From NCBI RefSeq assembly GCF_037042905.1, contig NC_087246.1:45632001-45696000 (forward strand): a stretch of 64,000 nt of DNA, written 5' to 3'. Position 1 is the first letter of the stretch. Every line of letters begins with the position of its first letter. Below the pieces are notes generated by a model. It saw only the letters and a program-made list of their open reading frames with translations, had not been told where the DNA came from and ran no database searches. Source of the DNA: Lytechinus pictus (lineage: Eukaryota). This document shows positions 1,430-22,173 of this stretch, piece after piece. The position numbers were made by a program, and so were the translations under genes.

Positions 1430-2725
1430 ATGGAGAATACAACCACGTCGATTCTCCGCAATCTTTCTGACCTAAGAATGACAGAATCGAGTGAGGCGAC
1501 TTTCCAGTTTTCAGTAAAATCCAAGGTTGTTTTCTCCGTAGAACTGTTGCTGGCCACTGTGACCATCGGAATGAATATCGTTATTCTGATAGCTTTCCAC
1601 ATCGAGAAAAGGTTGAGGACCTACTCCAACCAGTATATCATCAACATCACCATTTCCGATCTCCTTGTGGGGTTCATCATGTTGATTCGTTCTACCTTCG
1701 CCCTCTACAGAACCTGGGTATTTGGTGATGCTCTATTCTATGTCTTTGTCGGCGTTCAGAACACTCTTCTTGGAGTTTCAGTTCTCGGTGTTATTGCAAT
1801 TTGCATAGATCGTTACCTCGCAACCTGGTATCCGATTCATCATTTCCAAAGAAGAAGCAAAACGGTCGCACATGTCGTTAATGCTATCACCTGGGTCTTG
1901 TCCATTTCTTTCTGGATACCAATCGCAACAATCTGGGACTTGGTTAGCGGAGGAAAATCTAAGTCAAAGAGCATTGTGTTCAGCCCAAATTATGGTAACC
2001 ACGTGTATTCTATTGTTGGTGTCACACTCTGCCGCATGGCCATTCCCTTTGCTGTGATCCTGGTTCTTTACTTGAAGATCTGTGTTCGAGTCAGAACTAG
2101 ACGAAGGGAAAGAATTTTGAAGAGATTCAAGAGGTCTTCGAAAGTTGGAGTTGGGACTGAACCTCTTGCGGTAAAGGAGTATAAGATGAAAAATTCGTGG
2201 ACGAAACCACGAGATGATATTGATTTAAGAAATAATGCTTCTCGAAACGGTGTAAATCATTCTTCTCACGACCATACGATTCCTTGCTCCTCAAATTTCG
2301 GTCAACGTCGTATCAGAGAACAGATCAAGGTTAAGGAAAGTAAGAGAGGAGATCATTCTGGCATTTCTATTGTTGCGCCTTCATCTGAAAAGAAGCCAGC
2401 ACGTCAAATTACTGATCATGGGGTATCAACGACCATATCTGCAAGGTTGCAACATCAACAAAACAACAATGCTGGTCATATACCAGTTTCAGAAAACAGC
2501 AAAGTTATGTTAACCCTGACATTCATAGTAGTAGCCTTCTTCGTAACGTGGTTACCTAACGCCGTTAGTTTAATCTATAATAACGTGTTGACCAGTGACT
2601 ACGTGTTGAATGAAGTAACTCGCTGGATCACCTTCAGCAACAGCTTGCTCAATCCAGTTGCTTACGCTATGGCACAGCCGTTGTTCCGTACCACAATCGC
2701 GAGACTTGTAAAATGTCGTAAATGA
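1430..2725 (+). CDS. Class A (rhodopsin-like) GPCR 1, aminergic/muscarinic-histamine-like scaffold, orphan, single coding exon
   Basis: 431-aa ORF with 7 hydrophobic segments; GMN (TM1), SDLLVG (TM2), ICIDRY (TM3), FFVTWLP (TM6), NSLLNPVAY (TM7); long ICL3; splice-acceptor-like tttctatgtctag ends at 1420, just before the ATG. Confidence 0.95.
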   Translation: MENTTTSILRNLSDLRMTESSEATFQFSVKSKVVFSVELLLATVTIGMNIVILIAFHIEKRLRTYSNQYIINITISDLLVGFIMLIRSTFALYRTWVFGDALFYVFVGVQNTLLGVSVLGVIAICIDRYLATWYPIHHFQRRSKTVAHVVNAITWVLSISFWIPIATIWDLVSGGKSKSKSIVFSPNYGNHVYSIVGVTLCRMAIPFAVILVLYLKICVRVRTRRRERILKRFKRSSKVGVGTEPLAVKEYKMKNSWTKPRDDIDLRNNASRNGVNHSSHDHTIPCSSNFGQRRIREQIKVKESKRGDHSGISIVAPSSEKKPARQITDHGVSTTISARLQHQQNNNAGHIPVSENSKVMLTLTFIVVAFFVTWLPNAVSLIYNNVLTSDYVLNEVTRWITFSNSLLNPVAYAMAQPLFRTTIARLVKCRK

Positions 2726-2944
2726 ACGTCAACGTTTAAGAACTTTCATGATTCCGAATATTTGCTTTTGCGTTGGATACTTACCTACATACATGTAACT
2801 ATGTAGATTTGGTACAAGTGTTCGTGACAATTACAGTTGTACGGTGAAATCCATCATATTTTACTGGTCTAAGCATAAACAAGAAATTATTATCATGAAT
2901 GTGAATTAACGGATTCTATATTTTTTTCCACTCGTGGGCTGGAT

Positions 2945-3600
2945 AGCCCTCTTCAGCCACAGGCTGTTCTTCAGAGGGGTCCAGTGGACACGTTTAAAAA
3001 TACAAACATACAATATACAAACAAATACATATATTAAAGAAAACATAAATCAATCCTATACAAGATAGTTAGGACTACAAATTACAACTTATACAAATGT
3101 TTTGTTTTTTAAGTGGGATGGGGGATGGTGGGGGGGGGGGGGGATGGTAGCATGCAGTAAGGGGGAATCATAATAGGTGTTGAGCTAATGTGGTCCGAAG
3201 CTTTATCTTGAAGGTAGAAAGATAAGTTTCAGGAGGGATGTACGATATCAACTTGTTCCATAGCTTTCCGCCTTGAAACAAGAAACGTCTTTAATGTGCC
3301 ATATTCAGTTTTGGGGCAGCTCAAGGCCAGTTGCTATTTTCCTGACCTTGTTTTGTATATAGATTTATGGGAAATAAATATATCGCTAAGATATGGTGGA
3401 CCAAGACAATGTACGGATTTAAACATGACAACGGCCAAGTGTTTGGCCCAACGAATTTTTAGATTATCTATATTAAGCGAAGAATAAAGGAGTTTCGATG
3501 GATATAGGTAGTCAACCTGTAATCAGTTTTCAATGCTCTATTTTGTAATGTTTGCAATTTCTTATATTTGGTTTGGGAAGTTTTTCCCCATACAGTGCAA
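2945..3600 (-). mobile_element. 3' fragment of a CR1/L2-group LINE
   Basis: Minus strand 3540-3600 reads CTVWGKTSQTKYKKLQTLQNRALKT, typical of the RT C-terminal region of these LINEs; decayed; boundaries approximate. Confidence 0.55.
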
Positions 3601-4501
3601 CGAAGACTATGCCTTGAATTTTAACATATCATTAAATTTTCTTATCTTAATCGTTTTATTTTTTTTATTATCATTATGAAAAATATATGAAAATCTATTC
3701 GTGAAAACAATTTTGGCATATTCAATTTTCAATTTCACTTTGAATTTTCATTTTTGTCCATATGTCATCGTTCTAATCCTATTTACATGTCTTTTTACAG
3801 AAAAAAATTTGCAAGAAACAACCTTTTCCTTTGTATTTATGTTTTTAAACTTTGTTATGTATTTATTTCTATCGTTTCTTCTACATTGTTTTTTAATGAA
3901 AATTATTACAGACCATTTAACAATTAATTCAATCTTAAACTATTTCAGCAAACCAATTAGAAAGAGAGTAATGATCATTTTATGAATTTCATCTCGGTTC
4001 AAAAATTTACACAAGACTTCAAACAAAAAAGGTCATAAGATTTCGCGTTCCGAGAATATCGCGCGAATCGTTAAGGGGGCCCCTCGTCCTTTTGGGACAT
4101 CCTGATAATAAATGGCGAAACAGATCGTGCTAGTTTGTTACGTATAATAATATTGACTTTGCTTCTGAATCCCCGCAATCAAATAAAATTGTCAAATTAC
4201 AAGACAAGTATTGACCCTGTCGTGTCTGTCAAACCGAATAATGGAAAATGAGACCCTCGCATCTCGCCAGTTGACTTTGCCGGAGGCTGGAAGGCAAAAG
4301 GACTGACTAGAAATAATTGTCTCATCGTTCATGTTTTTTTTTATTCATAAACATGTATTCTTTTTTATAATTGTGTAATTTCCTTGTTTGTTTTATTAAT
4401 ACGTTTTGTTGTTTTGCATCGGTTGAATAGCGCTTTTGTCGTAAATAAAGGTAACAGAAGATATACATTTCACGTATTTTTCGACAACTCTGCCTGCAAC
4501 A

Positions 4502-4790
4502 CACTGGCGTACCTAGGATTTTCCAGAAGGGGGGCAAATTTTTTTGGAGGATATTTCGTCCGCGAAAAAATTGGACAAGCAAAAAAAAAAGGGTCTTCAA
4601 CCAAATAAAATGATTTCTTACCGGAAAAAAAGGTCTTCAGGTTCAAAAGAGGGGGTACACGTCTGTTTTTATTGCATTTTTACATTAAAAATTATTAATT
4701 TCGCTTCTCAAAAGGGGGGGGGGGCACGTCCCCTGCATGAGTTGTGACTCGTCAGGGGGGAGTCTGCCCCCCCCCTTAGGTACGCTAGTG
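4502..4790. mobile_element. hAT-like MITE (CA[CG]TRGCGTACC family)
   Basis: TIRs cactggcgtacctag / taggtacgctagtg; 8-bp TSD ctgcaaca (4494-4501, 4791-4798); relatives at 21653 and 54789. Confidence 0.85.
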
Positions 4791-5129
4791 CTGCAACACC
4801 TGTGCATCTTGAAAACGCAAATAATTTATAATGATTACCAAAACGAAACAGGACACGTAATACATAAGACATATCAATCATGCCCATCCTCGCCCAAATT
4901 GGTCTCAGACCTCTAGTCACGAAGACCTAAAATCGTTCCAAAACTTCTCAGATTGATAAAATCCCCGGAGAATAATAGATGAAAATGATTGACGAGAAGA
5001 AAGAAATGCTAAGAGATAGAGAGAGAGATGACGGGGTTCAATGATAGAAAGATGAAATGCCATGTATGATACAATGAAAAATAAGAAAAGAAAAAACCTC
5101 TCGCAGAAAAAGAAAAAAATAGGAAGAGG

Positions 5130-5192
5130 AAGATGGTGATGGTGGTGTTGTTGATGAGGATGATGATGATGATGGTGGTGGTGGTGGTGATA
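5130..5192. repeat. (GAT/GGT)n low-complexity trinucleotide tract
   Basis: gatggtgatggtggtgttgttgatgaggatgatgatgatgatggtggtggtggtggtgat. Confidence 0.8.
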
Positions 5193-5611
5193 TTGATAGA
5201 TTATATGCCTATCTATGGACTGGTGGTGGTAGTCATGGGAATGTTGCTGATGGTATGATGGACACACATAATGAGACTTGCGATTTGCAAATACATAAAC
5301 GAAATCAATCAGATCTTTATGCGGCCCATAATATAAACAGCATGACATCAAGAATAGATGGAATACAATGTAATCATTGTACGACTTGCCATTTTCTAGT
5401 TTGCATTAAATCATAAAAAAATCAATCATACATGTTTTCCGACTCATTTTCCGTGCATGAATAGGTACATCTCTGAATTATGGAATATTAGGTTCGATCA
5501 CTGACACATTTTTCAATTACCCTCAATCGGATTTTTTTTTGTCGTCCGTAATGGGCTACATGGTAAATTTTGTTTCTCAAAATCCCTTGTTTTCAGAGAT
5601 TCGCATCAATA

Positions 5612-5948
5612 GGAGCGTCGTGGTGTAGCGGTTCTGACTCTCGCCTTGCAATCAGAGGGACATGTGTTCGAATCCCTCCACGGCCCAGTGTCCCTTTGGT
5701 AAGGCGTTAATCCACACTTTGCCACTCTCTACCCAGGTGTTAAATGGGTACCCGGTAGGATGCGAAAGCCTATGTAGTATGCCTAGCAATTGAGTCTTGG
5801 AACTCTTGTAGTAATGCCACCCCGGGAGTGGAGATAGTGCATATATTGTGTGCAGGGATGTGAGGATCCGATGACCGGGGTAATAATAATTGCAATGTAA
5901 AGCGCTTAGAAACAAAGTGTAATAAGCGCTATATAACTATTATTATTT
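5612..5948 (+). mobile_element. tRNA-derived SINE, apparently full length
   Basis: Pol III A box tggtgtagcggt and B box gttcgaatcc; core cccaggtgttaaatgggtacc; LINE-like tail aagcgctatataactattattatt. Confidence 0.85.
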
Positions 5949-6084
5949 TCAATAGATGCAAATAATACCATGAAAACAATACATCAAGTTTCTTGACATA
6001 AAAGGTAAATTAGAGGTTAGGTGGTACTTTCGTATCGTGCCTAAATGGGACTGTCACACATGAGTGCGTTAACCAGTAACACCT

Positions 6085-6241
6085 GAGCCCCGTAACACAA
6101 AGGTTAGCGATGAATCGCTTATTTGAAAGAGTAATTCTAATTGGTTCCTATTCAGTGAGCTGAGCAACAAATGTACCGCAATGATTATCTTGATAGGCCG
6201 TTTCATTTACCGAATAATCGGCGACCTTTGTGTTACGGGCC
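6085..6241. mobile_element. Small MITE (PIF/Harbinger-like, CTG flanks)
   Basis: TIRs gccccgtaacacaaaggt / acctttgtgttacgggcc; relative at 57791-57951. Confidence 0.65.
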
Positions 6242-6500
6242 CTGGACACTAGATCAGTGGCCCTGGACAATCCTTCCCGAGTACTCAAGAGGGCGTTGTT
6301 TCACATGCGTATGCGCTGCGGATGGGGCCAGCTTCCCATTGACACCGACGTTATACGACGATTACGCATATGTCAAGGTCTGAATGCCCGAAATGTAATG
6401 ATTCTCAAAATGTTGAGTATGCTTCGGATTCTGTTCGAAGATCCTGGCAGGTAACGCCCTGACTCCTTCTAGTGGGTGAAGTGACGTCATCAGATGTTTT

Positions 6501-6777
6501 AATAATAATAACGCAGTTCTTGTATAGCGCATATCACATTATGTCATGCGCTTCCAAAGGACTTGGATATACCCTGGCTTTAGCCCCAAAGCCTTTTACA
6601 GCTCGGTGGCATTTCAAGGAATAAATTCCAGTCAGGTGCCCATTCATCTCACCTGGGTTGAGGCATCACAATGTGGATGAATTCCTTGCTGAAGGAAATT
6701 ACGCCATGGCTGGGATTCGAACCCACGACCCTCTTTTTAAAAGTCAGAAGACTAATCCACTGGGCCACAACGCACCA
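6501..6777 (-). mobile_element. tRNA-derived SINE
   Basis: Reverse complement shows tRNA head (B box gggttcgaatccc), core cccaggtgagatgaatgggcacc and an (att)n tail. Confidence 0.8.
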
Positions 6778-7029
6778 CAACGCGCCAGCGCCGAAATTCA
6801 TATACCTATGGATACCCATGGATGATAATGAACGAAGTCTCTGTATTCAACTCTAATTCCTTCTCCTCTTTAGGTTGGCTGGATCATGTCCTGGTAGGTC
6901 AGCGTCAAACTGGTCCACATCTCCAATATTTATCCAGTCCTTTCTCGAAGATGTGGACAGTGGGTGCATTAACTAATTCATTACTCTATTTCAAGGTTTT
7001 CTCATTCTTATGTAAAAAAATTATTACGT

Positions 7030-7560
7030 TTGTTAGTGACTGACCTCGGAATGTACAATTCTTTTGTTATGACCTCTAGTTGGCCCATGCGCCTCAACCA
7101 AATCTGGGACTACCTCCTGGTCATACCTGTGAAATAACTTGTATGTTTCAATCATATCTCCTCTCGCACGGCGATATGTCAATGTAAGAAGTCTTAGGTG
7201 AATCAATCTTTGTTCGTATGGAAGCTTCTTTATCTCAGGTACCACTTTAGAGGCCCTTCTTTGTGCATTTGTTATGGACTCCACACGGCAAGAGTATACT
7301 CCAAATGAGGTCTAATCAATGCTTTGTACAGGAGTAAAAAGTTCTTGTGAAGATAAACAAATGTTCTTCTTGTTAGATTCATTAGCCTATTGGCTTTATT
7401 TATCTTTTACTGACAGTGCTGGCCAAAACTAAGCTTTGTGTAAACTATCACTCATAAATCTTTACTTGCATCAAATTATGTGTGACAAAGTATGTGTGGC
7501 ATTATCATGTGTCAGTGTACAGTCATTAAATTCACCTTTTTTCAATTGCAAGTACACAAC
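7030..7560 (-). mobile_element. CR1-type LINE ORF2 C-terminal fragment (disrupted)
   Basis: AQRRASKVVPEIKKLPYEQRLIHLRLLTLTYRRARGDMIETYK is a hallmark CR1 ORF2 C-terminus. Confidence 0.85.
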
Positions 7561-7929
7561 ATTTATCCTGGTGGAACTTTCATAGCCACTTGTCCGACCA
7601 TGAAAGAAGACGATCTAAGTCTGCTTGTAATAGGTCAGCATCATTGTCATTTTTACAAGCCTGTATGTCTCAGTGTCGTCTGCAAATAAATAAATATCAC
7701 TGCCAAATGTTGCAGTCTGTCAATCTGTGGAGGTACCCCGAAAGAAATTAAGTTCTCAATCGGCACATAAAGTATTCGTTCAATCAGAGAAAAGCCGCAC
7801 GAATTTCTGGGGTCAAATATCTGTTTCAGTGGCAAACCAGCTGAAGTAAATGATTTTGTCAATAAGGAAATTGCTGACAGAATCCAAAGAGTAGACGAAT
7901 TATCCGTACGTCCTGAGTTTGAAGTTGCC

Positions 7930-8490
7930 ATTTACTCACAGTTCATACATTACAAAAGACCCACTTAGATAAACTCGACGTGCTAACCGATAAATACCTG
8001 AATAATTGGATAGGTATCCCTTCTCGAGGTGCCAGCATTGCTGTGGTCCACTTACCTCAAGGTCTCAATATCCCTAGACTATCCGACATTTACCGCCAAT
8101 CCCAATCCACCGCTTTTAGCAGATCGAGAGTTAAAAGCGGATTCAGTATTTAATCAAGCTATTGACTCTGCTATTGAAAGAGAGTCACAATGGTCACGAA
8201 AACAATCAACTGGAAAAGGAAAGTCACAAAGTATGACTCGATCGTTAGGGATATCAAGGAAAAGGGGTACACAGTGTCATTCTACGCTGTAGAAGTCGGG
8301 GCAAGGGGCCTAGTAAACCGGAATAATAAACACCGCCTTCAAAAACTCCTCAGAACAACAAATTCAAAAATCCGACCAACCGAATTTTCCATACCCTTTC
8401 TGAACTCGCCATACTCTCCTCTTTTTCGATATTTTACGCAAGAAAAGAGCGAACCTGGGGGAAGGTACGACACTTGGACCCGTAACCATC
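7930..8490 (+). mobile_element. Relic of a restriction-like-endonuclease non-LTR retrotransposon (HERO/NeSL-like), internally deleted
   Basis: LDKLDVLTDKYLNNWIGIPSRG (post-RT region), followed after frameshifts by KRKVTKY...FYAVEVGARG (RLE KxxKY / EVGxRG motifs). Confidence 0.7.
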
Positions 8491-9612
8491 CCCAAGGGCC
8501 CAAGATAATTTGCTTAGTTATGTTTTTTTAGCGTAAAGCAAATGTACTTTACTAATATTTCTTTCATAACTTTGTGATGTCAAAAGCTAATTAAGTTGAT
8601 CTGAATACACAAAGACATATTATGATCACGTCCATATATAATAATAATAATAATTAAGACGATATCGTAGTGGAAATTGGATATGTAACACCTCTCATAA
8701 TATTATCTGTACATTTCAAATTATACGTAATAATTGATTAACTCCATTTACATATCCAACTCTAATTTAGGAAATTTGATGAAGTTTTTTTTTCTTTCAA
8801 CGTGATATTAACGACAGCTTTAAACGATTATTTTCCTGCATTTATGTTACTCTAAATAATTTTCTATATTTGTATATACGTGTTACTTGTTTTGTAATCC
8901 ATGCATTGACCTGCCATTTGTTTGGAATGGAAACGGTGGACCTGGTCTCTTTATTTATATATATTATATCAGTGTCTTTGAACTTGAATAAAGTCATGAT
9001 GAAACTACAACGAAATCTGGTCTGGCAGATCATTGATGTATATTACAAAAAAGCAGGGGTCCGAGGACACTCCCTTCTGGTATTCCTCTGGTTACATCGG
9101 CCCAGTCAGAGAACACAGAGTCATCAAAAATACAGTGGTTGCTAAAACATAGGGGTTTATAGCCAAAGCCCACCCCCATCATACGCCATCTAATATAAGC
9201 ATGCGAAAAGAAAATTGGATGCTAGACACCCCCAAAGGCAACATCAACGATTTAAAAAATATTTTAAGCTTGAAAAATTACATAAGCTTTAAAATAACTT
9301 GTCAAAATTGATCAACAATAAACCCCCCAAAAAAATCTCAAAACAAAAAGAAGGAGGAAACAAGTTTTGACGTTCAGGGTTCTCTCAAGCGTGAGATGTG
9401 GACACTGCAGTTCGCAAATTATGGTGTCAAAGAAATCCACTGTATCTTGTCTTTTATTCATCTTTACAACTTCAAATTTTAACAGCATGAACAGGAAAAA
9501 TCATGTCCAATTTCCTAATTTGGCTTTTTGAAGACCAATTTAGTATTTTTGCTATATAAGATAACATTTCTTGACAACTTATTGTTGGTTTTGATGTGGC
9601 TGGTCTTATTTG

Positions 9613-10872
9613 TTATCGTCGAAATTTCAGAATCCTTAGAATGTTTTCACGAAAAATAGGCTGAGCAAAAGCATAGGAGATCGGGTTAATAAGGCTGTTG
9701 AGGTAAGTCACCCAGCGGGAAATTTCAGCAAAGACCGGATTGTTGGACGCCACATAGAAATAAATAACATTAATACTGTTGGGTAGCCAAGTAATGAAAA
9801 AGGCAGCCGTGATGAAGGTTAGTGTCCGCATGATCTTGTAGTTGTCACGAGTGGAAAGGCGATCTTTTCGGCTCCTGGGGAAGCCTTTTGAACGCGATGG
9901 CATTGATGCGGCGTCGCCTGGTTTTTCTAGTTGGTTAACTGAACTCGAGTGGCCATTGTTTTGTCGCAGACCGGCGGTATCATGTAACGCAAAAGGTTGT
10001 CTTATCGAAGAAGCTTTCCGAATGTATATATCTTTGGCATTGTCGACTGCGTAGTCGTTTGCACTTTTGTGATCATTACGGTGTGCCACGCAGTTCTTTG
10101 CACTTAGTTGACATTGTATCGTCGCCACGGTATTTCCTCTCGTTCCCCTTGTTTCCTCTTTTGTCTTTAACTCAAATTTGTTTGAAAGATACTTGCTTCC
10201 CGATCCTTTTACTCGGATATAAATCTTGAGATAAAGGGTTGCGATGATGATGAATGGAATTGCCAATCTACAAACTGCAAGTGCCACAGTAGAATAGATG
10301 TAATTACCGTAATTAGGAGCAAAGGGGTCATTTTCATCCTTCGGTGCAGATGGTTGGACAAAGTCCCAGATCACCGCAATAGGTATCCAAAAGGCCAAGG
10401 ACACCATCCAGATAATGGCGTTGACCATGTATGCTACTCTCTTTTTCTTACGTTGGAAATGGCGAATCGGATGATACGTCGCGACGTAACGGTCCAAGCA
10501 AATAGCAATAATTCCCAGGACTGATACTCCAAGAACTATATTCTGGACACCAATAAAAATAATTCCGAGGTCGTCCCCAAAGATCCATGTGCCGTACAGG
10601 ATAATCGAACACCGAATGGCCATAACGAACCCTACTAGGAGATCAGAGATGGTGATGTTAAGGATGTACTGGTTGGAGTAGGTACGCAACCGTTTGTCGA
10701 TGTGAAACGCCCTCAGAATCAACAGGTTCATGCCGACGGTCATCACGGTCAACAAAAGTTGGACGCAGAAAATAATAATGGAATTTGGGGATGGGTCAAA
10801 ATTCCATAGTGTAGAAGCTGGCATAGTCGTATCATCGAACAAGCCAAGAGGGATGTTTGTTAGTTCGTCCAT
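9613..10872 (-). CDS. Class A GPCR 2 (paralog of GPCR 1 and 3)
   Basis: 7TM with ICLDRY, FFITWLP, NSLINPISY. The ORF is open to 11010, but acceptor cctttacttgcag (AG at 10895-10894) precedes the coding exon, so the start is likely MDELT (10872) or MNKVA (10887). Confidence 0.93.
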   Translation of the reverse strand: MDELTNIPLGLFDDTTMPASTLWNFDPSPNSIIIFCVQLLLTVMTVGMNLLILRAFHIDKRLRTYSNQYILNITISDLLVGFVMAIRCSIILYGTWIFGDDLGIIFIGVQNIVLGVSVLGIIAICLDRYVATYHPIRHFQRKKKRVAYMVNAIIWMVSLAFWIPIAVIWDFVQPSAPKDENDPFAPNYGNYIYSTVALAVCRLAIPFIIIATLYLKIYIRVKGSGSKYLSNKFELKTKEETRGTRGNTVATIQCQLSAKNCVAHRNDHKSANDYAVDNAKDIYIRKASSIRQPFALHDTAGLRQNNGHSSSVNQLEKPGDAASMPSRSKGFPRSRKDRLSTRDNYKIMRTLTFITAAFFITWLPNSINVIYFYVASNNPVFAEISRWVTYLNSLINPISYAFAQPIFRENILRILKFRR

Positions 10873-11199
10873 GGCCACTTTATTCATGAAATTCTGCAAG
10901 TAAAGGAATAGCGCGAAAAACCCAAGTTGCATGACTATCAAATTATAATACGATGGTGAGACACATGGCCGTACGCAGCAAAATTCACCCAAAGTATGCA
11001 TGAAATCCAATAATTATTTTACTGGGTCGCAAAAAAGTTTACCCTTCTCATGCGCGTATTCTGGGCCCGGTCCCCCGAGTAGGCGAAAAGGGGGCGCCAA
11101 ATAGAGAAAGAAAAGAGGGGGAAAAAAGGGGAAGAAAAAAGGAGGGAAAGAAGAAGAGAAAGAAAGAGATAGGGAAATAATAAGGGAGAGTGAAGGGGG

Positions 11200-12190
11200 G
11201 GGGGGCGCCGAATCAATGTCTGACACAGGGGCGCCGAATTAATGATCGACATATATAGGGGCGCCTAATCGATGTCCGACATAGGGGCGCCGAATTAATG
11301 TTTGACATATATAGGGGGCGCCGAATTGATATCCGACCTAGGGAGGCGCCGAATTGATGTTCGACATAAAAGGCGCCGAATTGATTTTCGACCTAGTGGC
11401 ACCGAATCGATGTCCGACATAGGGGCGCAGAAACGAAGTTCAACCTAGGGGAGGCGTTGAATTGATGTCCGACCCAGGGGCGCCGAATTGAAGTTAAACC
11501 TAGGGGAGGCGTTGAATTGGTGTCCGACCCAGGGGCGCCGAATTGAAGTTCGATATAGGGACGCAGGGTTGATCTTCAACCTAGGGGGGCGAATTGAAGT
11601 TCGATATACGGGACGCCGAATCTGTGCTCGACCTAGGGGGCGCCGAATTGATGTTCTACCTAGGGGCGCCGAATGAAGTTCAACATAGGGGCGCCGAATC
11701 GGTGTTCGACCTGGGGGGCAAATTTACGTTCTATCTAGGGGTGGGGGCGCCGAATTGATGTTGAACATAGGGGCGACAATTTGATGTTTCTCCTGGGGCG
11801 CCAAGTTCATCTTTGACCCTTCAGACGACAATTTGATCTATGTCCTGGGGCAGTAAATTCATGTTCACCCTAAGGAGGGGGGCGCCAAACTCATATTCGA
11901 CTTTTGGGGCGTCAAATTGATGTTTATCCTAGGGCGCCGAAGTCATAGTCAACCTAGGGAGGGAGGCGCCAAATTCATATTCGACCTTTCGGGAGCCAAT
12001 TTGATGTCTGACCTGGGGCGCCAAATTCAAGTTTCACATGCGGGCGGGGGGCGACAAATTAAACCTGACCGGAGGCGCTAGATTGACCTGAAACAAGGGG
12101 CGCCAAATTGACCTGAAGTAAAGGGGCACCAAAATGACCTTAATCTCGTGGGGGTGCCAAATCGATGTTTGACCGGGGGCGCCAAATTTC
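11200..12190. repeat. GC-rich degenerate minisatellite (~31-35 bp, ggggcgccgaattgatgttcgacctag) inside an older repeat
   Basis: Roughly 30 degenerate copies; shorter homologous array at ~18910-19570. Confidence 0.85.
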
Positions 12191-13277
12191 TGTTTCACAT
12201 GAGTTTGGCGCTCCTGCTCGCATCAATTGATAAGTTAGATGACCATCCTGTTCATGATTACCAAAAGTGCTTAGAAAGTCAACATTTTCGGTCAGAATAT
12301 CATAAATTTTTATCTCGCTCTTCGCGCTCGCATCAATTGTTTAGTAAGGTGACGATCCCGTTCATGGATAGATAACTGCTTAGAATGTCCAACTTTGTAT
12401 CGAAATATCAAAAATTTTCAGCTCGCGCTTCGCGTTCGCATTTAATGTTTTGTTAGATACTCGTCCTGTTCATGATTACCAAAAAATTTTACTCGAATGT
12501 CCAACTTTTATAGTCAGAATATCAAAAATTTTCACCATGCGCTTCGTGGTCTTCGATTGTGTTTTTTCACGTGATAATAAAATAAGATAATTCAACACGC
12601 ATTTTTTTGAAATGGCGCCTCCCCTCCCCCCCCCCCCCCCTATCCCGTCAGTCAAACATACGTGCCTGAAGGCACGTATGTTTGCCTGGCGGGAGGAGGG
12701 TGCCATTTTCCGAAAAAGTTCACAGGGGCGCCAAAATTAGGTCGGGGCCCCGGGGAACAAAATCCTGGATCCTGCTCCTCCCCCCTCCAAAGCAAAAAAA
12801 AAATCTGCGTACGGCCATGGTGACACAGATTTATAAAGTGCGTCTTGAAAATTAGATACCGCAAAGATCGAAAGCACACTGTGACAAAAGCGCGCATCAG
12901 CATTGGATATTATTATTTTTTATTTAAGATGTAAAGTATGCGTAATTCATACATTTCAATTAATGTGCATAAACCACTGGTTCAACGGCTTACAAAACCA
13001 CCTCTGTGAATTTGGGTTATAATTGATCAAATTGCGAGCAGCAATGCCGAGACATCGATAAATCAACTCTTCCTTATGAACTTTATTACCACCATCATTT
13101 TATTTTCTTGGTCTTGAAACGTTTTTGAGGGACGAGGGTGTGACCCCCAGCCCCCCCCCCCCGACCTTTTGTACGCCAGTGATTATGGTCACACTCATGT
13201 CACGCTATTAGAAATATTAACATAGCACACAGTTTTATTGGAATAAACCGAGATTGATTTTGCCTTCACCATAATAT

Positions 13278-13317
<40 letters not shown>

Positions 13318-13320
<3 letters not shown>

Positions 13321-14137
13321 TGCGTCCCACAAAAAACGAAACCGAGATTAAGCGATGATTTATCATAACTTAATCACAAATACAATAGACAAATGACCTA
13401 CCAATTTAAAGCTTAGAATCCCCTCTTTCATCTGATATTACTTAGATTATTTCTCATTCACGCATGAGTGAGCAAAAACAATTTGAAGAAAGGATACCAA
13501 AAACTCATTTGGCGGGGTGTATCTGAATTTCAAAAAGAAAATCACATGCCTAAAAAGTTCAAAATCTGCTCTTTTATTTGATACCTTAATCACAAAAAAA
13601 GGTCAAGAAGTAAAAAAAGTTATGTTCCCTCGAAACAATGCTTGTATTTCCATAATTTCATTAAATAAACGTGTTTTCACCGGTTTCCCACAGAAGCTGT
13701 CGCATGGTTAACAAAATACTTAATTGCATGGCTGATCGTCAACAAATCGGAGTGTCAAGTGAGTTTGGACGCTTGCCTGTAGAACCTCTTAATTTTATGA
13801 AATTATTGAAATTCAAGCCTTTTTTCAAATAACCAGAACTTTGTTATTTCTTGACCATTTTCTGTAATTGAGGTATCAAATTAAAAAGCAGATATTGAAC
13901 TTTTTAAAAATGTGGTTTCTTTTTGAAACCCAGATACAGCCCGCCAAATGACTTTTCGGTATCCCCTCTTCAAATTGTTTTTGCTCACTCATGCCTGAAT
14001 GAGAAATAATATAAGTAATTGCAGATGAAAGAGGAGATTCTAAGCTTTACTATGATAGGTCATTTGTCTATTGTATTTGTGATTAAGTTGTGATAAATCA
14101 TCGATAAACCTCGGTTTCGTTTTTTGTGTGGGACGCC

Positions 14138-14140
<3 letters not shown>
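13318..14140. mobile_element. Tc1/mariner-type MITE with ~300-bp TIRs, flanked by (TA)n
   Basis: cagtgcgtcccacaaaaaacgaaaccgag ... ctcggtttcgttttttgtgtgggacgccctg; TA runs on both sides; absent from duplicate copy 2 (~20835). Confidence 0.9.
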
Positions 14141-14227
<87 letters not shown>

Positions 14228-14585
14228 TAACAAAGAACAGCTTACCTTTTGATGCAGCACTATGTTTATAGTTTGAGGGGTTTCCTAATAATTCTTCAAA
14301 ACTTATCACCGGAAAGCTATAGCAATACATGCACCGAAATAGATGAAGTTTTAAGGCCTGAGCACACGTCGCCTTCTGGCTCAAGAGCTCAAACAAAGAT
14401 GTATTATATAAATTGATCAAAAAATCCCAATGCCCTTTTGAACAGGGGCATAACCTTCGCAGATGTAATTATGGGATTAACTTTGCAGAATATGATACCT
14501 GATTCTCAGTTGCCCCACCCACGTCCTGACTACCGTGATGCGAAAGCAAATATTATATTTACACATCGGTATCATTAATGCATCT

Positions 14586-14751
14586 CGTGTTCATGCTGAA
14601 AAGTGAATATGAATGAGCGAAAATCTAACATAATGAATCTGGGAGTATAAAAGTATCGACTGACTGATCGTGTTCATGCTGAAAAGTGAATATGAATGAG
14701 CGAAAATCTAACATAATGAATCTGGGAGTATAAAAGTATCGACTGACTGAT
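14586..14751. repeat. Perfect 83-bp tandem duplication
   Basis: cgtgttcatgctgaaaag...gactgactgat at 14586 and 14669; single copy at ~21238. Confidence 0.95.
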
Positions 14752-15682
14752 GAAACTCAATCTAGCAAAGTCGGGGAGATGCCAAAGTTACTGATTGGCA
14801 TTATGGTGAAATTAAAAAAGAGAAGAAGAATCGCTTTTTATTTGAGCTTGCTTTTAACTGAATGTTTGGTTTAGAAGTGCTGCGTCAAGATTGTGTTCTT
14901 ATATATCTCAACTTTTTAATATACCTCAACAATTTAAAAAGGTCTTTCTGTATTTTTTCTGTCTATTTATACCATTCTTTCTCCCTAAATACCTGCCACC
15001 CCTTTCTCTTTATCTCTCTCATCATCTCAATCCCTGGTTAATCCTCTATTCTCGTATACCTATACCTTTCTTATGCAAATGAACAAAATCTTGCAAGAAG
15101 GTGTAAAATGCCCTAACAGTCCGCTTACCTAAGTCTTTGATATGTTTGACAGCTTTGACGTCTTTTCGATAGTCACAGTTTTTTTAATTACGTGATGAAA
15201 TATTTACCTCTTTAATCAGCAGTCCTCATAATAATTTCTGTAATCTCGTAAACCTGTCAATCATGTATCATTAGTTCTGTATCACGCATCCACTACCATC
15301 TTCATCAATCTCTCTCATTTTCCTTACCATGTCCATGATATTTACCTCTCTATATTATAACTCCTTTCATTTCCATTTCATTCTATTCGGTTTCTTTCCT
15401 TTCTATTTCGTCATTTCCATGAAGTTACACATTTTCCAACCCTTCCCTTTCTATCTCTCTTTTTTGCTCTTCATGCCCATCTTATTTCTCCTTATCCTTT
15501 CCTATCCATACACAAACAGCGATCTTTTGTTTTTTTATCTTTGATCTTCTTGTGCAAATGCATGAGTTTATTATAATACATTTTGATTACTCTCATTTTC
15601 AAAATATCTAGAAAGCCACCATCTCTATTTTGTAAGTTGCACTTATTTATTCTCTCGAATGAGCACTACGTCAATCCAGCTA

Positions 15683-15906
15683 CAGTCGTGCTCAAAAGTT
15701 GGTGAACCCCACCACAAAATGCACTCCTTCATGCTGAGTGTTGAATGTAGACAACACTACATGTACAATGTTTGGCGAGTCCAAAGGAACAAACTTTATT
15801 GAATATAATGTTTCACCTGACTTCACAATTAAATATGTAAAATATGGCAGAACTTGAACACTTTAAACATGTTCTGGTGGGGTTCACTAATTTTTGAGCA
15901 CCACTG
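15683..15906. mobile_element. Tc1-like MITE (TA TSD), present in both duplicate copies
   Basis: ta|cagtcgtgctcaaaagttggtgaacccca ... tggggttcactaatttttgagcaccactg|ta; second copy at 24448-24677. Confidence 0.85.
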
Positions 15907-16305
15907 TATGTAATTGTTTTGTTTTATATAAGTATTCACTTCTTGGTTTGATCGGAAATTAAACTGTAAAAGTAACCAAAAACGTTCCTAAAATTCAGAA
16001 CCATCTTTCCACAAATGCACATGCAATACAAGTAATATTGAATGGATTCGTTCCTTGGGAAGAATATATTGATGTAAAGATTGAGTCGAATTTTACCCCT
16101 GGTATTAAGCATAACCAAAGACAAGCTGAACAAAACTCGGAAAAAAGTTTGACAGATGTTCGATAATGGATAATAATACACGCAGCACCCCCCGCTTCAC
16201 AGGGCCATGTGAATTATTAAACACATCGCGGCCATCCAAATATTATAGCTGGAAATGAGAAGTGGTACATGGGCTGCTCCTATCGAATCATTACCAGATG
16301 ATCTG

Positions 16306-16461
16306 GGGCCTGTTGCATAAAACTTTTTACCTGAGAAAACTCAGGTTGATTTTACCGGAGTTTTTGCCCTGTGTTAAAGTCAATGGCAAAAATCAGACTA
16401 ACCTTGGTTTTCAGTTTTTACCAGAGTTTTCTAAGGTAAAAAGGTTTTATGCAACATGCCC
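16306..16461. mobile_element. MITE with CTG TSD (PIF/Harbinger-like)
   Basis: ctg|gggcctgttgcataaaact ... ggttttatgcaacatgccc|ctg. Confidence 0.75.
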
Positions 16462-17320
16462 CTGGTTGAAAAGCAAACTTGGATTAGACCATGTGGGATG
16501 AGACCAAACCGAAAGTAGACAAAGTGGGTGAAGACAAAATGGCAAGTTACCAAAAATAATCTGATGATAAATATTCTGATGGTACATTACATTCCTTGCG
16601 TATATCAACATTTTTCAAAACGCTCTAAGTAAATGCCAATTTATAGAGTTCATGTTGCCTTTTATCAGGCCATTGGAGAAGTCACAACATATAAATAAGA
16701 AATCACAATTATGTTATTCACCAAACGTTTATCATATTCATTAACATGATTCAATTTCCTTATTTCTTTAATCCCAAACTTTTTTCATTATTTTTCCGAA
16801 AACACGATAGGCCTACCAGTCACCAAAAATACAGTGGTTGCTAAAATATATAATTGGGGTTTATAGCCAAAGCCCACCCCCATCATACGCCATCTAATAT
16901 AAGCATGCGAAAAGAAAATTGGATGCCAGACACCCCCAAAAGAAACATCAACTATTTACAAATATATGTTTAAGCTTGAAAAATGACATCCTAAGCTTTA
17001 AAATAACTTGTCAATATTGATCAACAATAAACCTAAAAGAATATCTCTTAAAAAACAAAAAAAGGAGGAAACAAGTTTTGACGTCCAGGGTACTCTCAAG
17101 CGTGAGATTTGGACACTGCAGTTCGCAAATTATAGTGTCAAAGAAATTCATTGTATCTTGTCTTTTATTCAACTTTACAACTTCAAATTTTAACAGCATG
17201 AAAAAGAAAAATCACACCCCTTTTAGGTATGCTAATTTCCTAATTTGGCGTTCTGAAGACCAATTTAGTATTTTTTGCTATATAACAGAACATTTCTTGA
17301 GAACTTATTGTTGGTTTTTG

Positions 17321-18589
17321 TTATCGTCGAAATTTCAGAATCCGTAGAATGTTTTCACGAAAAAGAGGTTGAGCCATAGCATAGGAGATCGGGTTAATAA
17401 GGCTGTTGAGGTAAGTCACCCAGCGGGAAATTTCAGCAAAGACCGGATTGTTGGACGCCACATAGATATAAATAACATTAATACTGTTGGGTAGCCAAGT
17501 AATGAAGAAGGCAGCCGTGATGAAGGTGAGTGTCCGCATGATCTTATGGTTGTCACGAGTGGAAATGGGATCTTTTCGGCTTCTTGAGAAGCCCTTTGAA
17601 CGCGATGGCATTGATGTGGCGTCGCCTTGTTTTTCTAGTTGGTTAGCTGAACTCGAGTGGACATTGTTTTGTCGAAGAACCGCGGTATCATTTAACGTAA
17701 AAGGTTGTCCTCTTGCAGAAGCTTTCCGGCTGCATATATCTTTGGCATCGTCGACTGCGTTGTCGTTTGCAATTTTGTTATTCTCATGGTTTGCCACGCA
17801 GTTCTTTGCATTTATAGTTAGTGGACATTGTATCGTCGCCACGGTATTTCCTTTCGTTTCCCTTGTTTCCTCTTTTGTCTTTAACTCAAATTTGTTTGAA
17901 AGATACTTGCTTCCCGATCCTTTTACTCGGATATAAATCTTGAGATAAAGGGTCGCGATGATGATGAATGGAATTGCCAATCTACAAACTGCAAGCGCCA
18001 CAGTAGAGTAAATGTAATTACCGTAATTAGGAGCAAAGTGGTCATTTTCATCCTTCGGTGCAGGTGGTTGGACAAAGTCCCAGATCACCGAAATTGGTAA
18101 CCAAAAGGCCATTGACACCATCCAGATAATGGCGTTGACCATGTATGCTACTCTCTTTTTCTTACGTTGGAAATGGCGAATCGGATGATACGTCGCGACG
18201 TAACGGTCCAAGCAAATAGCAATAATTCCCAAGACTGATACTCCAAGAACTATATTCTGGACACCAACAAATATGATTCCGAGGGCATCCCCAAAGATCC
18301 ATGTGTCGCTCAGGATAATTGAGCACCGAATGGCCATAACGAACCCCACTAGAAGGTCAGAGATGGTGATGTTCAGGATGTACTGGTTGGAGTAGGTACG
18401 TAACCGTTTGTCGATGTGAAACGCCCTCAGAATCAACAGGTTCATGCCGACGGTCATCACGGACAACAACAGTTGGACGCAGAAAATAATAATGGAATTA
18501 GGGGATAGGTGAAAATGCCATAGTGTAGAAGCTGGCATAGTCGTATCATCGAACCAGCCACGAGGGATGTTCGTTGTTGTTTCTTCCAT
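17321..18589 (-). CDS. Class A GPCR 3 (recent duplicate of GPCR 2)
   Basis: TM segments nearly identical to GPCR 2; the same upstream acceptor (cctttacttgcag) supports a start at MEETT (18589); ORF open to 18697. Confidence 0.93.
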   Translation of the reverse strand: MEETTTNIPRGWFDDTTMPASTLWHFHLSPNSIIIFCVQLLLSVMTVGMNLLILRAFHIDKRLRTYSNQYILNITISDLLVGFVMAIRCSIILSDTWIFGDALGIIFVGVQNIVLGVSVLGIIAICLDRYVATYHPIRHFQRKKKRVAYMVNAIIWMVSMAFWLPISVIWDFVQPPAPKDENDHFAPNYGNYIYSTVALAVCRLAIPFIIIATLYLKIYIRVKGSGSKYLSNKFELKTKEETRETKGNTVATIQCPLTINAKNCVANHENNKIANDNAVDDAKDICSRKASARGQPFTLNDTAVLRQNNVHSSSANQLEKQGDATSMPSRSKGFSRSRKDPISTRDNHKIMRTLTFITAAFFITWLPNSINVIYIYVASNNPVFAEISRWVTYLNSLINPISYAMAQPLFRENILRILKFRR

Positions 18590-19614
18590 ATCCACTTTAT
18601 TCACGAAATTCTGCAAGTAAAGGAATAACGTGAAAATGCAAGTTGAACGACTCTCAAATTTTGATACGATGGTAAAACACATGGCCGTACGCAGCAAAAT
18701 TTAGCAAAAGTATGCATGAAATCCAATAATTATTTTACTCGGTCGCCAAAAAGTTAACCCTCCTCATACGCGTATTCTGGGGGGCCCTCGGGACCCAACC
18801 CCCCGTGTAGGCGAAAAGGGGGGCGACAAAAAGAGGAAGAAAAGAGAGGGGAAAAGGGGGAGAAAAAAGGAGGGAAAGAAGAAGAGAAAAAGGGAGAAAG
18901 GAGAGGGAAGGGGGCGCCGAATGGACGTTCGACATATATAGGGGCGCCGACTTGATGTCCGACCTAGGGTGGCGCCGAATTGATTTTCGACTTTGTGGCA
19001 CCGAATTGATGTTCGACATAGAGGCGCTGAAACGAAGTTCAACCTAGGGGCGCCGAATTGAAGTTAAACCTAGGGGAGGGGTTGAATTGATGTTCTATCT
19101 AAGGGCACATAATTGCAGTTTAACATTTGGGCGCCGAATCTGTGTTGACCTAGGAGGGTAGGTCGAATTGATGTTCTATCTAGGGATGGGGTATGCCGAA
19201 TTGATGTTCAATATAGGGGCGACAATTTGATGTTTATCCTGGGGCGCCAAAGTCATGTTCAACCTAGGGAGGGGGGAGTGGCGCCAAATTCATCTTTGAC
19301 CCTTGAGACGACAATGTGATCTTTGTCCTGGGGTGGCAAATTCATGTTCAACCTAGGGAGGGGGCGCCAAACTCATATTTGACTTTTGGGGCGTGAATTT
19401 GATGTTTGTCCTAGGGCGCCGAATTCATAGTCAACCTAGGAAGGGAGGCGCCAAATTCATATTCGACCTTTCCGGCTCCAATTTGATGTCTGACCTGGGG
19501 CGCCAAATTCAAGTTTCACATGCGGGCGGGGGGGGGGGGGCAAATTGATGGCTGACCGGGGGCACCAAATTCCTGTTATACATGAGTTTGGAGCTCGCAT
19601 CAAATGCAAAATTA

Positions 19615-20047
19615 AGGCAACCGCACACCTTACGTCTGGGCCACGATTCGATTTGGGAATAAATCGCATTTTGCTGATTTTCTGAAAATGTAAATGAAAA
19701 GTATTTTTCATTTGAGGTTCGAATTGTTTGAAAGAATACTAATATAGCAATTTTGAATTATTTCAATCCTTTATTTTGGAGCAAAGGCCAAAATACAGTA
19801 GTTTCAAATCGAAGCCAATCGTACAATTGCAATGACGTCATTACGACTAAATATTAAATTCGCTTTTATTCTAGCAAGGACGATACCATAGTCACAGATT
19901 TGAACATAGGTATTCAAACGATGATTTAAAACATTACACAGTAAGTTATTCCATGTCTCAATATTAGCATCAAATTCTACTACTACCATGACTACGTTTT
20001 TATTCCAAAATCGGGTCGCAGACCAATCGTAAGGTGTGCGGTGGCCT
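19615..20047. mobile_element. PIF/Harbinger (Tourist-like) MITE, TTA TSD
   Basis: tta|aggcaaccgcacaccttacg ... cgtaaggtgtgcggtggcct|tta; empty site (single tta) at ~12235 in copy 1. Confidence 0.88.
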
Positions 20048-21541: not shown

Positions 21542-21579
<38 letters not shown>

Positions 21580-21598
21580 TCCTTTCTATCTAAATACA

Positions 21599-21866
21599 TA
21601 GTCTGCTGGGCAAACCCTTCACTCGAGTAAAGGGTCTGAATTGCAGCCTACTCACTAGCGTACCTACGGGGGGGGGGGGGCAGGGGGGCAGTCTGCCCCC
21701 CCTGACGAGCCACAACCCATGCAAAGGACGTATCCCTGCCCCCCCCCCTGACGAGCTTGAAGACCTTTTTATTTATTTTTTATTTATTTCTTTTTTATTA
21801 TTTTTTTTTTTGCTTGTCAAATTTTTTTCTGGAACAAATGCCTTTATTTGTGATTTAAGTTGAAGA

Positions 21867-21900
<34 letters not shown>

Positions 21901-22173
21901 TGTCAAATTTTTTTCTGGTACAAAAGCCTTTATTTGTGATTGAAGAACTTTTTTTTTTTTTTTTTTTTTTTTTTTGGGGGGGGGCTTGTCATATTTTTTG
22001 GCGGACGGTTTTGCCACCCCTGTGGAAAATCCTAGGTACGCCACTGAGCCTACTCATGCCTTGTGTACTGAAGGCCCTCTCGCTCAGGAACAGCAAGTTT
22101 TGTATGTGCTAGTCTTTGCGTGGTGGCACACTTGTTGATCAAAGTTCCAATCAGGGTCTGTGCCTGCAGACTA
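21599..22173. mobile_element. TAG...CTA MITE with 9-bp TSD (AcademH-like?), with a nested hAT-like MITE
   Basis: ctaaataca|tagtctgctgggcaaaccct ... agggtctgtgcctgcagacta|ctaaatacc; empty site ctaaatacc at ~14985. Confidence 0.75.
21653..22046. mobile_element. hAT-like MITE (same family as 4502)
   Basis: TIRs cactagcgtacc / ggtacgccactg; 8-bp TSD agcctact. Confidence 0.85.

What the first reader, a model, noticed from the sequence alone, without database searches (positions are those of the whole stretch)
1430..18589. Three aminergic-scaffold GPCRs with a charge-reversed ligand pocket (Q3.32; R2.60, R5.46, R7.39)
Seen: counting from D2.50, DRY, P5.50 and NPxxY, all three receptors have Q-N at 3.32-3.33, Arg at 2.60 (M[LA]IR), Arg at 5.46 (CR[ML]AIP), Asn at 6.51, and E7.36/R7.39 next to W7.40. 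Known: amine receptors bind the cationic amine through Asp3.32, and W7.40 with a long ICL3 is typical of that class. Inference: conservation across the divergent GPCR 1 versus GPCR 2/3 suggests an amine-receptor-derived family retooled for an anionic ligand (carboxylate, phosphate or sulfate), possibly chemosensory.
Basis: partly seen in the sequence, partly recalled or inferred. Interest (0 to 1): 0.72.

Follow-up and report, generated by a model that had tools for sequence, protein, structure and literature searches.

The report
Sea-urchin amine-like receptors with arginine pocket
Three intact sea-urchin receptor genes belong to a small urchin-only family that looks like acetylcholine/amine receptors but has swapped the acidic amine-binding residue for a conserved set of arginines, so it probably senses a negatively charged small molecule that nobody has identified yet.

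Summary
The window (Lytechinus pictus) holds three intronless class-A GPCR genes: 1430-2725 (+), 9613-10872 (-) and 17321-18589 (-). All three carry Q3.32, N3.33, R2.60, R5.46, N6.51, E7.36, R7.39 and W7.40.

They belong to a family found only in echinoids, with about 10 genes in L. pictus and members in Strongylocentrotus and Diadema.
- In 25 non-redundant members, R5.46 is kept in 25, Q3.32 and N3.33 in 24, R7.39 in 23 and W7.40 in 25.
- R2.60 (21), E7.36 (19) and N6.51 (13) are looser.

The nearest sequences and folds are muscarinic, histamine and 5-HT receptors. In trees, however, the family sits in an echinoderm-only clade that is separate from true muscarinic receptors.

Mean net charge at pocket positions is +2.3, against -1.2 in muscarinic-type receptors. 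Pocket positions are more conserved than the other TM positions, unlike the diversifying sister clade. TM-core dN/dS is 0.16-0.35.

An anionic or zwitterionic small ligand is the best reading, but it is untested. I could not check side-chain orientation or expression.

The scan had already flagged a related array elsewhere in this genome (s1-323354). That array falls in the sister clade.

The parts
1430..2725 (+). GPCR 1: intronless CDS, 431 aa. R87 (2.60) at 1688-1690, Q110 (3.32) at 1757-1759, N111 (3.33), N187 (ECL2 PNY), R202 (5.46) at 2033-2035, N377 (6.51), E395 (7.36), R398 (7.39) at 2621-2623, W399 (7.40). F at 3.25.
   Evidence: 98% identical to an L. pictus protein that NCBI names 'histamine H2 receptor-like'
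9613..10872 (-). GPCR 2: intronless CDS, 419 aa from the conserved ATG at 10872. R87 (2.60) at 10612-10614, Q110 (3.32) at 10543-10545, R202 (5.46) at 10267-10269, R386 (7.39) at 9715-9717. G at 3.25.
   Evidence: The NCBI model of this gene (P0004, 376 aa) starts inside TM1, but the longer N-terminus and its ATG are conserved in both L. variegatus orthologs.
17321..18589 (-). GPCR 3: intronless CDS, 422 aa, a young tandem duplicate of GPCR 2 (88% aa identity, dS 0.12). R88 (2.60), Q111 (3.32), R203 (5.46) at 17981-17983, R389 (7.39) at 17423-17425.
9340..22615 (.). Two copies of a tandem duplication unit of about 7.7 kb that carries GPCR 2 and GPCR 3. Matching segments are 92-95% identical, with start-to-start spacing of 7.2-7.7 kb.

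Best explanation
The three genes encode working G-protein-coupled receptors of an echinoid-only family (about 10 genes per genome). The family arose inside an echinoderm-only branch of the amine/muscarinic-like receptors.

The activation machinery is canonical: the D2.50/S3.39/N7.45/S7.46 sodium site, DRY, P5.50-V3.40-F6.44, W6.48, NPxxY, and a long ICL3.

The orthosteric pocket has been rebuilt. The amine counter-ion D3.32 is Q. The muscarinic Tyr lid residues Y3.33, Y6.51 and Y7.39 are N, N and R. A5.46 is an invariant Arg. R2.60 and E7.36 are usually present, and an invariant Asn follows the ECL2 Cys position.

Inferred mechanism:
- A small anionic or zwitterionic ligand (carboxylate, dicarboxylate or amino acid, phosphate, sulfate, or an anionic lipid head group) sits in the old amine site.
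- It is held by the guanidinium groups of R5.46 and R7.39 on opposite walls, with Q3.32, N3.33, N6.51 and the ECL2 Asn as hydrogen-bond partners. R2.60 and E7.36 may act as an auxiliary pair.
- Variable neighbouring positions (3.29, 5.39, 5.42, 5.43, 6.51, 6.52, 6.55, 7.35) tune each paralog.

Shown here: gene integrity, purifying selection, family limits, conservation and pocket charge. Inferred: that the arginines face the pocket (from homologous positions in solved amine receptors) and the chemistry of the ligand.
For: - Intact ORFs and 7tm_1 hits.
- The AF2 model has TM pLDDT above 90. Its best solved-structure matches are M5, M4, M2, H1 and H3, with target-normalised TM-scores of 0.87-0.90.
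- In the alignment to M4, Q falls on D3.32 and R on A5.46.
- Family conservation in 25 non-redundant members: R5.46 25, Q3.32 24, N3.33 24, R7.39 23, W7.40 25, R2.60 21, E7.36 19.
- Nine L. pictus paralogs carry the signature.
- Members come only from Lytechinus, Strongylocentrotus and Diadema.
- The family is monophyletic at 91/97 support. The echinoderm-only clade is separated from muscarinic/amine receptors at 100/97.
- Mean net pocket charge is +2.3, against -1.2 for muscarinic and -2.0 for other D3.32 receptors.
- Pocket entropy is 0.27-0.30, below 0.34 for other TM positions. Muscarinic receptors show the same pattern; the sister clade shows 0.42 against 0.31.
- TM-core dN/dS is 0.16-0.35, while ICL3 ranges from 0.31 to 1.06.
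- R5.46 is kept through CGC and AGA codons.
- Basal Diadema members have the Arg signature together with the C3.25-ECL2 disulfide. The arginines therefore did not arise to replace the disulfide.
- From my own knowledge: positions 3.32, 5.46, 6.51 and 7.39 line the orthosteric site in M2 and other amine receptors, and Arg7.39 anchors anions in SUCNR1 and P2Y1.
Against: - No ligand, docking or coordinates. The tools return no model coordinates, so side-chain orientation was not tested.
- A helical conservation-moment test was inconclusive.
- By the crude count, GPCR 1 has net pocket charge 0 (3+, 3-), because of E1.39 and an Asp at the TM7 top.
- E7.36 sits one turn from R7.39 and could neutralise it.
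- Q3.32 is also common in peptide receptors (my own knowledge).
- No expression evidence was obtained.
Confidence: 0.5

Rival explanations
1. These are peptide receptors. Q3.32 and the pocket arginines would recognise a neuropeptide's free C-terminal carboxylate, acidic residue or sulfotyrosine rather than a small metabolite.
For: From my own knowledge, Q3.32 is frequent in peptide receptors (NPY, orexin, vasopressin/oxytocin), and arginines bind peptide carboxylates in NTSR1 and AT1R. The conserved pocket fits a conserved endogenous ligand.
Against: The 60 listed sequence hits and the 50 listed fold hits are all aminergic receptors, none a peptide receptor. The N-terminus is short (about 30 aa). 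ECL2 is short, is modelled as coil plus one helical turn rather than a beta-hairpin, and has no disulfide in most members.
Confidence: 0.15
2. The arginines are structural rather than ligand-binding. An internal polar network (R2.60-E7.36, R7.39-E7.36, R5.46-N/Q) would fill the pocket and give a constitutively active or ligand-independent receptor, or stabilise a bundle that lost its disulfide.
For: E7.36 lies one turn from R7.39. R2.60 and E7.36 are both lost in three members (P0012, P0013, P0026; listing). Most members lack the C3.25-ECL2 disulfide. Orphan amine-like receptors with self-occupied pockets exist (my own knowledge).
Against: Basal Diadema members have the Arg signature and the disulfide together. 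The invariant R5.46 has no conserved acidic partner among pocket positions, and mean net charge stays at +2.3. The covariation test had only 3-4 independent contrasts and showed nothing. The sodium site and microswitches are those of ligand-gated receptors.
Confidence: 0.15
3. These are environmental chemoreceptors of the lineage-expanded sea-urchin type (surreal-GPCR-like), detecting diverse waterborne cues.
For: The genes are intronless, tandemly duplicated and echinoid-specific. Their sister clade forms large tandem arrays with a hypervariable pocket. Sea-urchin expanded GPCRs are reported in tube feet and pedicellariae (PMC7042368, PMC5442662).
Against: There are only about 10 genes per genome. 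Pocket positions are more conserved than the rest of the TM bundle, the same pattern as in muscarinic receptors. TM-core dN/dS is 0.16-0.35. No expression data were obtained.
Confidence: 0.15
4. They are still amine or acetylcholine receptors that use a non-canonical counter-ion such as E7.36.
For: The scaffold is amine-like and keeps W7.40 and Y/F7.43. E7.36 is present in 19 of 25 members. Some fish TAARs moved their counter-ion (PMC8890504).
Against: D3.32 is absent in every member. Three cationic side chains at ligand-contact positions would repel a cation. Nine of the 14 M2-type orthosteric residues are changed.
Confidence: 0.05

Closest known systems
Muscarinic acetylcholine receptors (M1-M5) and histamine H1/H3 receptors
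   Same: They are the best sequence matches (E 3e-29 to M4) and fold matches (target-normalised TM-score 0.87-0.90). Shared features: long ICL3, short C-tail, W4.57, W6.48, W7.40, Y/F7.43, V3.40, the sodium site, DRY and NPxxY.
   Different: There is no D3.32. Y3.33, S3.36, T5.42, A5.46, Y6.51, N6.52 and Y7.39 are all replaced, by N, L, V, R, N, A/S/T and R. Most members lack the C3.25-ECL2 disulfide. In trees the family lies outside the muscarinic clade, in an echinoderm-only clade.
Echinoid 'DRH' muscarinic-like arrays, e.g. L. pictus C8:21.9-22.0 Mb (earlier finding s1-323354)
   Same: This is the sister clade in both trees. It is echinoid-only, has no D3.32, and often has a basic residue in the pocket: R3.32 in many members and R5.46 in the C8 array.
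   Different: It keeps C3.25, has DRH instead of DRY, and in the genome matches only TM1-TM5 lies in one open frame. It forms large tandem arrays and has a hypervariable pocket (entropy 0.42 against 0.31 for other TM positions). It lacks the Q3.32-N3.33/R7.39 signature.
Anion-sensing class-A receptors (SUCNR1, P2Y1, hydroxycarboxylic-acid and free-fatty-acid receptors, prostanoid receptors)
   Same: Functional resemblance only: arginines at pocket positions, notably 7.39 or 7.40, anchor carboxylates or phosphates (my own knowledge).
   Different: They are not related beyond class A. None of them appears among the 60 PDB sequence hits listed. Arg at 5.46 and 2.60 is not their pattern.
Diamine-sensing TAAR13c and other retuned olfactory TAARs
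   Same: An amine-receptor scaffold whose pocket charge pattern was rewired to a new ligand class. In TAAR13c two acidic anchors hold a di-cation, and here two invariant arginines could hold a di-anion. TAAR13c structures are among the hits (PMC8890504).
   Different: The charge has the opposite sign. The TAARs keep the disulfide and are vertebrate genes.

Membership tests
Class A (rhodopsin-like) GPCR, Pfam PF00001 | 7tm_1 profile match above the gathering score | tested here: met
   126-135 bits against a cut-off of 30.5
Class A (rhodopsin-like) GPCR, Pfam PF00001 | Seven TM helices with N1.50, D2.50, D/ERY, W4.50, P5.50, WxP6.50 and NPxxY | tested here: met
Biogenic-amine / muscarinic receptors | Asp3.32 counter-ion for the ligand's cationic nitrogen | tested here: not met
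   Q3.32 in all three genes and in 24 of 25 family members; the other has H
Biogenic-amine / muscarinic receptors | Muscarinic orthosteric set (Y3.33, S3.36, T5.42, A5.46, Y6.51, N6.52, Y7.39, Y7.43) | tested here: not met
   Only Y/F7.43 (plus W4.57 and W6.48) is retained
Biogenic-amine / muscarinic receptors | C3.25-ECL2 disulfide | tested here: not met
   Both cysteines are absent in the window genes. Both are present only in basal Diadema members.
Biogenic-amine / muscarinic receptors | Placement inside the muscarinic or amine clade in a phylogeny | tested here: not met
   The echinoderm-only clade is separated from D3.32 muscarinic/amine representatives at 100/97 support. The tree is unrooted and its sampling is limited to the best 150 representatives.
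Biogenic-amine / muscarinic receptors | Closest overall sequence and fold similarity; W7.40; long ICL3 | tested here: met
Sea-urchin surreal-GPCRs (Raible et al. 2006, groups A-F) | Assignment to one of the published groups | not testable with these tools
   The defining paper is not held. No paper in the library cites the S. purpuratus accessions.
Sea-urchin surreal-GPCRs (Raible et al. 2006, groups A-F) | Rapid lineage-specific expansion in tandem arrays of intronless genes | tested here: inconclusive
   The genes are intronless with local tandem duplication, but there are only about 10 per genome and the pocket is conserved.
Known anion-sensing class-A receptors (SUCNR1/P2Y/HCA/FFA) | Sequence relatedness to those families | tested here: not met
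   All 60 listed PDB sequence hits are aminergic (amine or muscarinic) receptors.
Known anion-sensing class-A receptors (SUCNR1/P2Y/HCA/FFA) | Activation by an anionic ligand through pocket arginines | not testable with these tools
   This needs a receptor assay and mutants.

The most novel reading that the evidence does not exclude
The family is an echinoid invention: a transmitter- or metabolite-type receptor family for one class of small di-anionic or amino-acid-like ligands (for example dicarboxylates, acidic amino acids, nucleotides or sulfated metabolites). It was built on an amine-receptor scaffold by placing two invariant arginines (5.46 and 7.39) across the old amine site. This would be the charge mirror image of diamine-sensing TAAR13c, and a new ligand class for the aminergic branch of class A.
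Probability: 0.3. Interest if true: 0.7.

Novelty: new variant of a known kind. Interest (0 to 1): 0.45.

Why it matters
Every characterised receptor of the amine branch of class A that I know of binds a cation through Asp3.32. A conserved, selected subfamily that puts arginines at ligand-contact positions on this scaffold would show how a receptor pocket can be recharged for an opposite-sign ligand.

It would also point to an unknown signalling molecule in sea urchins, which are major developmental and ecological model animals. The family offers a defined, small set of deorphanisation targets with obvious mutants (R5.46, R7.39, Q3.32).

It also corrects database names. These proteins are labelled 'muscarinic M5-like', 'histamine H1/H2-like' and '5-HT1A-like', yet they lack the residues needed for those ligands.

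Tried and rejected
1. Expression. The single sequencing-run search found one run of unknown type. Laying it on 1-6000 gave short, low-depth contigs over both gene and intergenic DNA, which is the pattern of low-coverage genomic DNA. There is therefore no RNA evidence either way.

2. Side-chain orientation. The structure tool returns no coordinates. A substitute test, the angle between each residue and the local helical conservation moment, gave moments no stronger than shuffles.

3. Covariation of R2.60 with E7.36, and of R7.39 with N6.51, on the family tree. Only 1-4 independent contrasts were available, so no inference is possible.

4. Literature. No paper in the library describes this family or cites its S. 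purpuratus accessions. Raible et al. 2006 is not held.

5. DNA of the S. purpuratus ortholog of gene 1 (P0003) is not on record, so ortholog dN/dS was done only for genes 2 and 3 against L. variegatus.

6. Pseudogene or artefact: rejected. The ORFs are intact, dN/dS is below 1, and the family is conserved from Diadema to Lytechinus.

7. 'True muscarinic paralogs': rejected by pocket residues and by the tree.
Full report
**What is there.** The window lies on Lytechinus pictus chromosome piece C2 at 45.63 Mb. It contains three uninterrupted ORFs:
- 1430-2725 (+), 431 aa;
- 9613-10872 (-), 419 aa counted from the conserved ATG;
- 17321-18589 (-), 422 aa.

Each matches Pfam 7tm_1 at 126-135 bits. 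Genes 2 and 3 are 88% identical and lie in a tandem duplication of about 7.7 kb. Gene 1 is 43-45% identical to them.

NCBI models of the gene-2 type start inside TM1. However, the longer N-terminus and its ATG are conserved in both L. variegatus orthologs, so the full ORF is the better model.

**Check of the observation.** I counted positions from the x.50 landmarks and cross-checked them against the HMMER alignment to human M4. In that alignment Q falls on D3.32, N on Y3.33, F on C3.25 and R on A5.46.

All three genes have R2.60, Q3.32, N3.33, R5.46, N6.51, E7.36, R7.39 and W7.40. In addition, all three lack C3.25 and any ECL2 cysteine.

**Family and distribution.** A word-indexed search, an exhaustive HMMER search of 1.84 billion representatives and a family-profile search all recover the signature only in echinoids: Lytechinus pictus and L. 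variegatus, Strongylocentrotus purpuratus, and Diadema setosum and D. antillarum. A few unnamed ENA and metaclust entries also appear. Diadema (Diadematoida) and Lytechinus (Echinacea) are deep branches of the euechinoids.

In the L. pictus genome nine ORFs carry the signature, with a tenth partial match. Three are in this window, two or three at C11:14.64-14.67 Mb, three on C9 and one at C2:64.46 Mb.

Conservation among 25 members made non-redundant at 90% identity:

| Position | Members with the residue |
|---|---|
| R5.46 | 25 |
| W7.40 | 25 |
| Q3.32 | 24 |
| N3.33 | 24 |
| R7.39 | 23 |
| R2.60 | 21 |
| E7.36 | 19 |
| N6.51 | 13 |

An Asn in a P-N-Y motif just after the ECL2 cysteine position is invariant. 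On the family tree R7.39 changed once. R2.60 and E7.36 changed four times each, and N6.51 seven times. R5.46 is Arg in all 25 non-redundant members.

**Relationship to known receptors.** The 60 listed PDB sequence hits are all aminergic, led by M4, M2, M3, H1 and 5-HT1. The AF2 model has TM pLDDT above 90 and pTM 0.73, with ICL3 disordered. Its best fold matches are M5, M4, M2, H1 and H3, with target-normalised TM-scores of 0.87-0.90.

The trees do not place the family inside the muscarinic clade.
- One tree is a quick tree of 145 sequences. The other is a careful LG+C20 tree of 66 sequences.
- In the careful tree the family is monophyletic at 91/97 support, or 99/94 when the Diadema protein P0043 is included.
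- Its sister is an echinoid 'DRH' clade.
- Both lie in a clade whose named members are all echinoderms: crinoid, asteroid, ophiuroid, holothurian and echinoid.
- That clade is separated from the D3.32 muscarinic and 5-HT-like representatives at 100/97 support (names).
- The trees are unrooted and cover only the best 150 representatives.

Members of this echinoderm clade that branch outside the Q3.32 family and its nearer relatives still have D3.32. Other branches have K3.32 (asteroid), E3.32 (crinoid), S3.32 (holothurian) or R3.32 (echinoid DRH clade).

The DRH clade includes the C8:21.9-22.0 Mb array that the scan flagged earlier as s1-323354.

**Order of changes inside the family.** P0043, the earliest Diadema branch, has R2.60, Q3.32, E7.36 and R7.39, but still has T5.46, Y6.51 and C3.25. 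Other early-branching Diadema members have the full Arg signature together with C3.25 and the ECL2 cysteine. In all other members the two cysteines are lost together. The arginines therefore did not appear as a replacement for the disulfide.

**Selection.** Across all pairs of L. pictus genes 2 and 3 and their two L. variegatus counterparts, TM-core dN/dS is 0.16-0.35 and ICL3 dN/dS ranges from 0.31 to 1.06. dS is 0.12-0.16 both between paralogs and between species. The duplication is therefore about as old as the species split, or it was homogenised by gene conversion. Gene 1 against gene 2 has saturated dS and a ratio of about 0.2. R5.46 is encoded by CGC in gene 1 and by AGA in genes 2 and 3.

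**Pocket properties.** I used 43 generic class-A pocket positions; the list itself comes from my own knowledge. At these positions the family averages 3.3 basic and 1.0 acidic residues, a net charge of +2.3. For comparison:

| Group | Mean net pocket charge |
|---|---|
| This family | +2.3 |
| 51 muscarinic-signature representatives | -1.2 |
| Other D3.32 receptors | -2.0 |
| Other D3.32-less sequences (mainly echinoderm) | +0.4 |

Genes 2 and 3 score +2. Gene 1 scores 0, because of E1.39 and an Asp at the top of TM7.

Pocket positions are more conserved than the other TM positions (entropy 0.27-0.30 against 0.34). Muscarinic receptors of similar overall divergence show the same pattern (0.20-0.30 against 0.37). 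The sister DRH clade shows the opposite (0.42 against 0.31).

This is the pattern of receptors for one conserved ligand class, with an invariant anchor and variable selectivity positions. It is not the pattern of diversifying odorant receptors.

The sodium site (D2.50, S3.39, N7.45, S7.46), DRY, Y5.58, P5.50-V3.40-F6.44, W6.48 and NPxxY are conserved. These look like ordinary ligand-activated receptors.

**Interpretation.** The descriptive part is well supported: an echinoid-specific, selected, amine-like receptor family with a rebuilt and positively charged pocket.

The mechanistic part is inference. It rests on two pieces of established knowledge. First, positions 3.32, 5.46, 6.51 and 7.39 line the orthosteric site of M2 and other amine receptors. 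Second, pocket arginines, notably 7.39, anchor carboxylates and phosphates in SUCNR1 and P2Y1. The proposal is an anionic or zwitterionic small ligand bridged by R5.46 and R7.39, with Q3.32, N3.33, N6.51 and the ECL2 Asn as polar partners.

Several rivals remain open: a peptide ligand, a purely structural internal salt-bridge network, environmental chemoreception, and a relocated amine counter-ion.

I could not test side-chain orientation because no coordinates are returned. I could not test expression because the only run found looks like genomic DNA. No paper in the library describes the family.

**Verdict.** This is a new variant of a known kind and a reasonable deorphanisation target of moderate interest. 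A related array in the same genome has already been reported by this scan.

Noticed in passing
window 11202-11717 and 18939-19515: A minisatellite of 26-28-nt units containing GGCGCC lies about 330-350 bp upstream of the ATGs of genes 2 and 3 and is part of the duplicated unit. It accounts for the local GC peak (0.44-0.47) and the positive GC skew.
   Followed up: partly
window 9613-10872 and 17321-18589; L031, L032: Public gene models of the gene-2 type (376-378 aa in L. pictus and L. variegatus) start at a Met inside TM1. The upstream 43-codon extension with its own ATG is conserved in four genes of two species, so those models look N-terminally truncated.
   Followed up: yes
L031 and L032 (L. 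variegatus CM031016.1, 35.79 and 35.89 Mb): The two L. variegatus counterparts of genes 2 and 3 lie about 94 kb apart, not 7.7 kb as in L. pictus. dS is similar within and between species (0.12-0.16), so either the duplication is old and was rearranged, or there was gene conversion.
   Followed up: partly
G000 C8:21.89-22.02 Mb, C5:4.85-4.94 Mb, C7:48.78-48.83 Mb (L010-L030): Large tandem arrays of the sister 'DRH' clade. They keep C3.25, have a variable 3.32 (R, S, F, N, A, T) and R5.46 in the C8 array, and only TM1-TM5 lies in one open frame. Their pocket is hypervariable, consistent with chemoreceptor-like diversification.
   Followed up: partly
just upstream of the window (earlier notes s1-324909, s1-325072): Earlier notes describe nearby genes upstream of the window: a catalytically dead CD73-like (5'-nucleotidase-like) gene and a hydroxyacid-oxidase paralog with an altered carboxylate-binding Arg. 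Both families handle anionic metabolites. This is probably coincidence and I did not examine it.
   Followed up: no
window 56886-57016: A run of 131 N (assembly gap or masked), outside the finding. I left it untouched.
   Followed up: no
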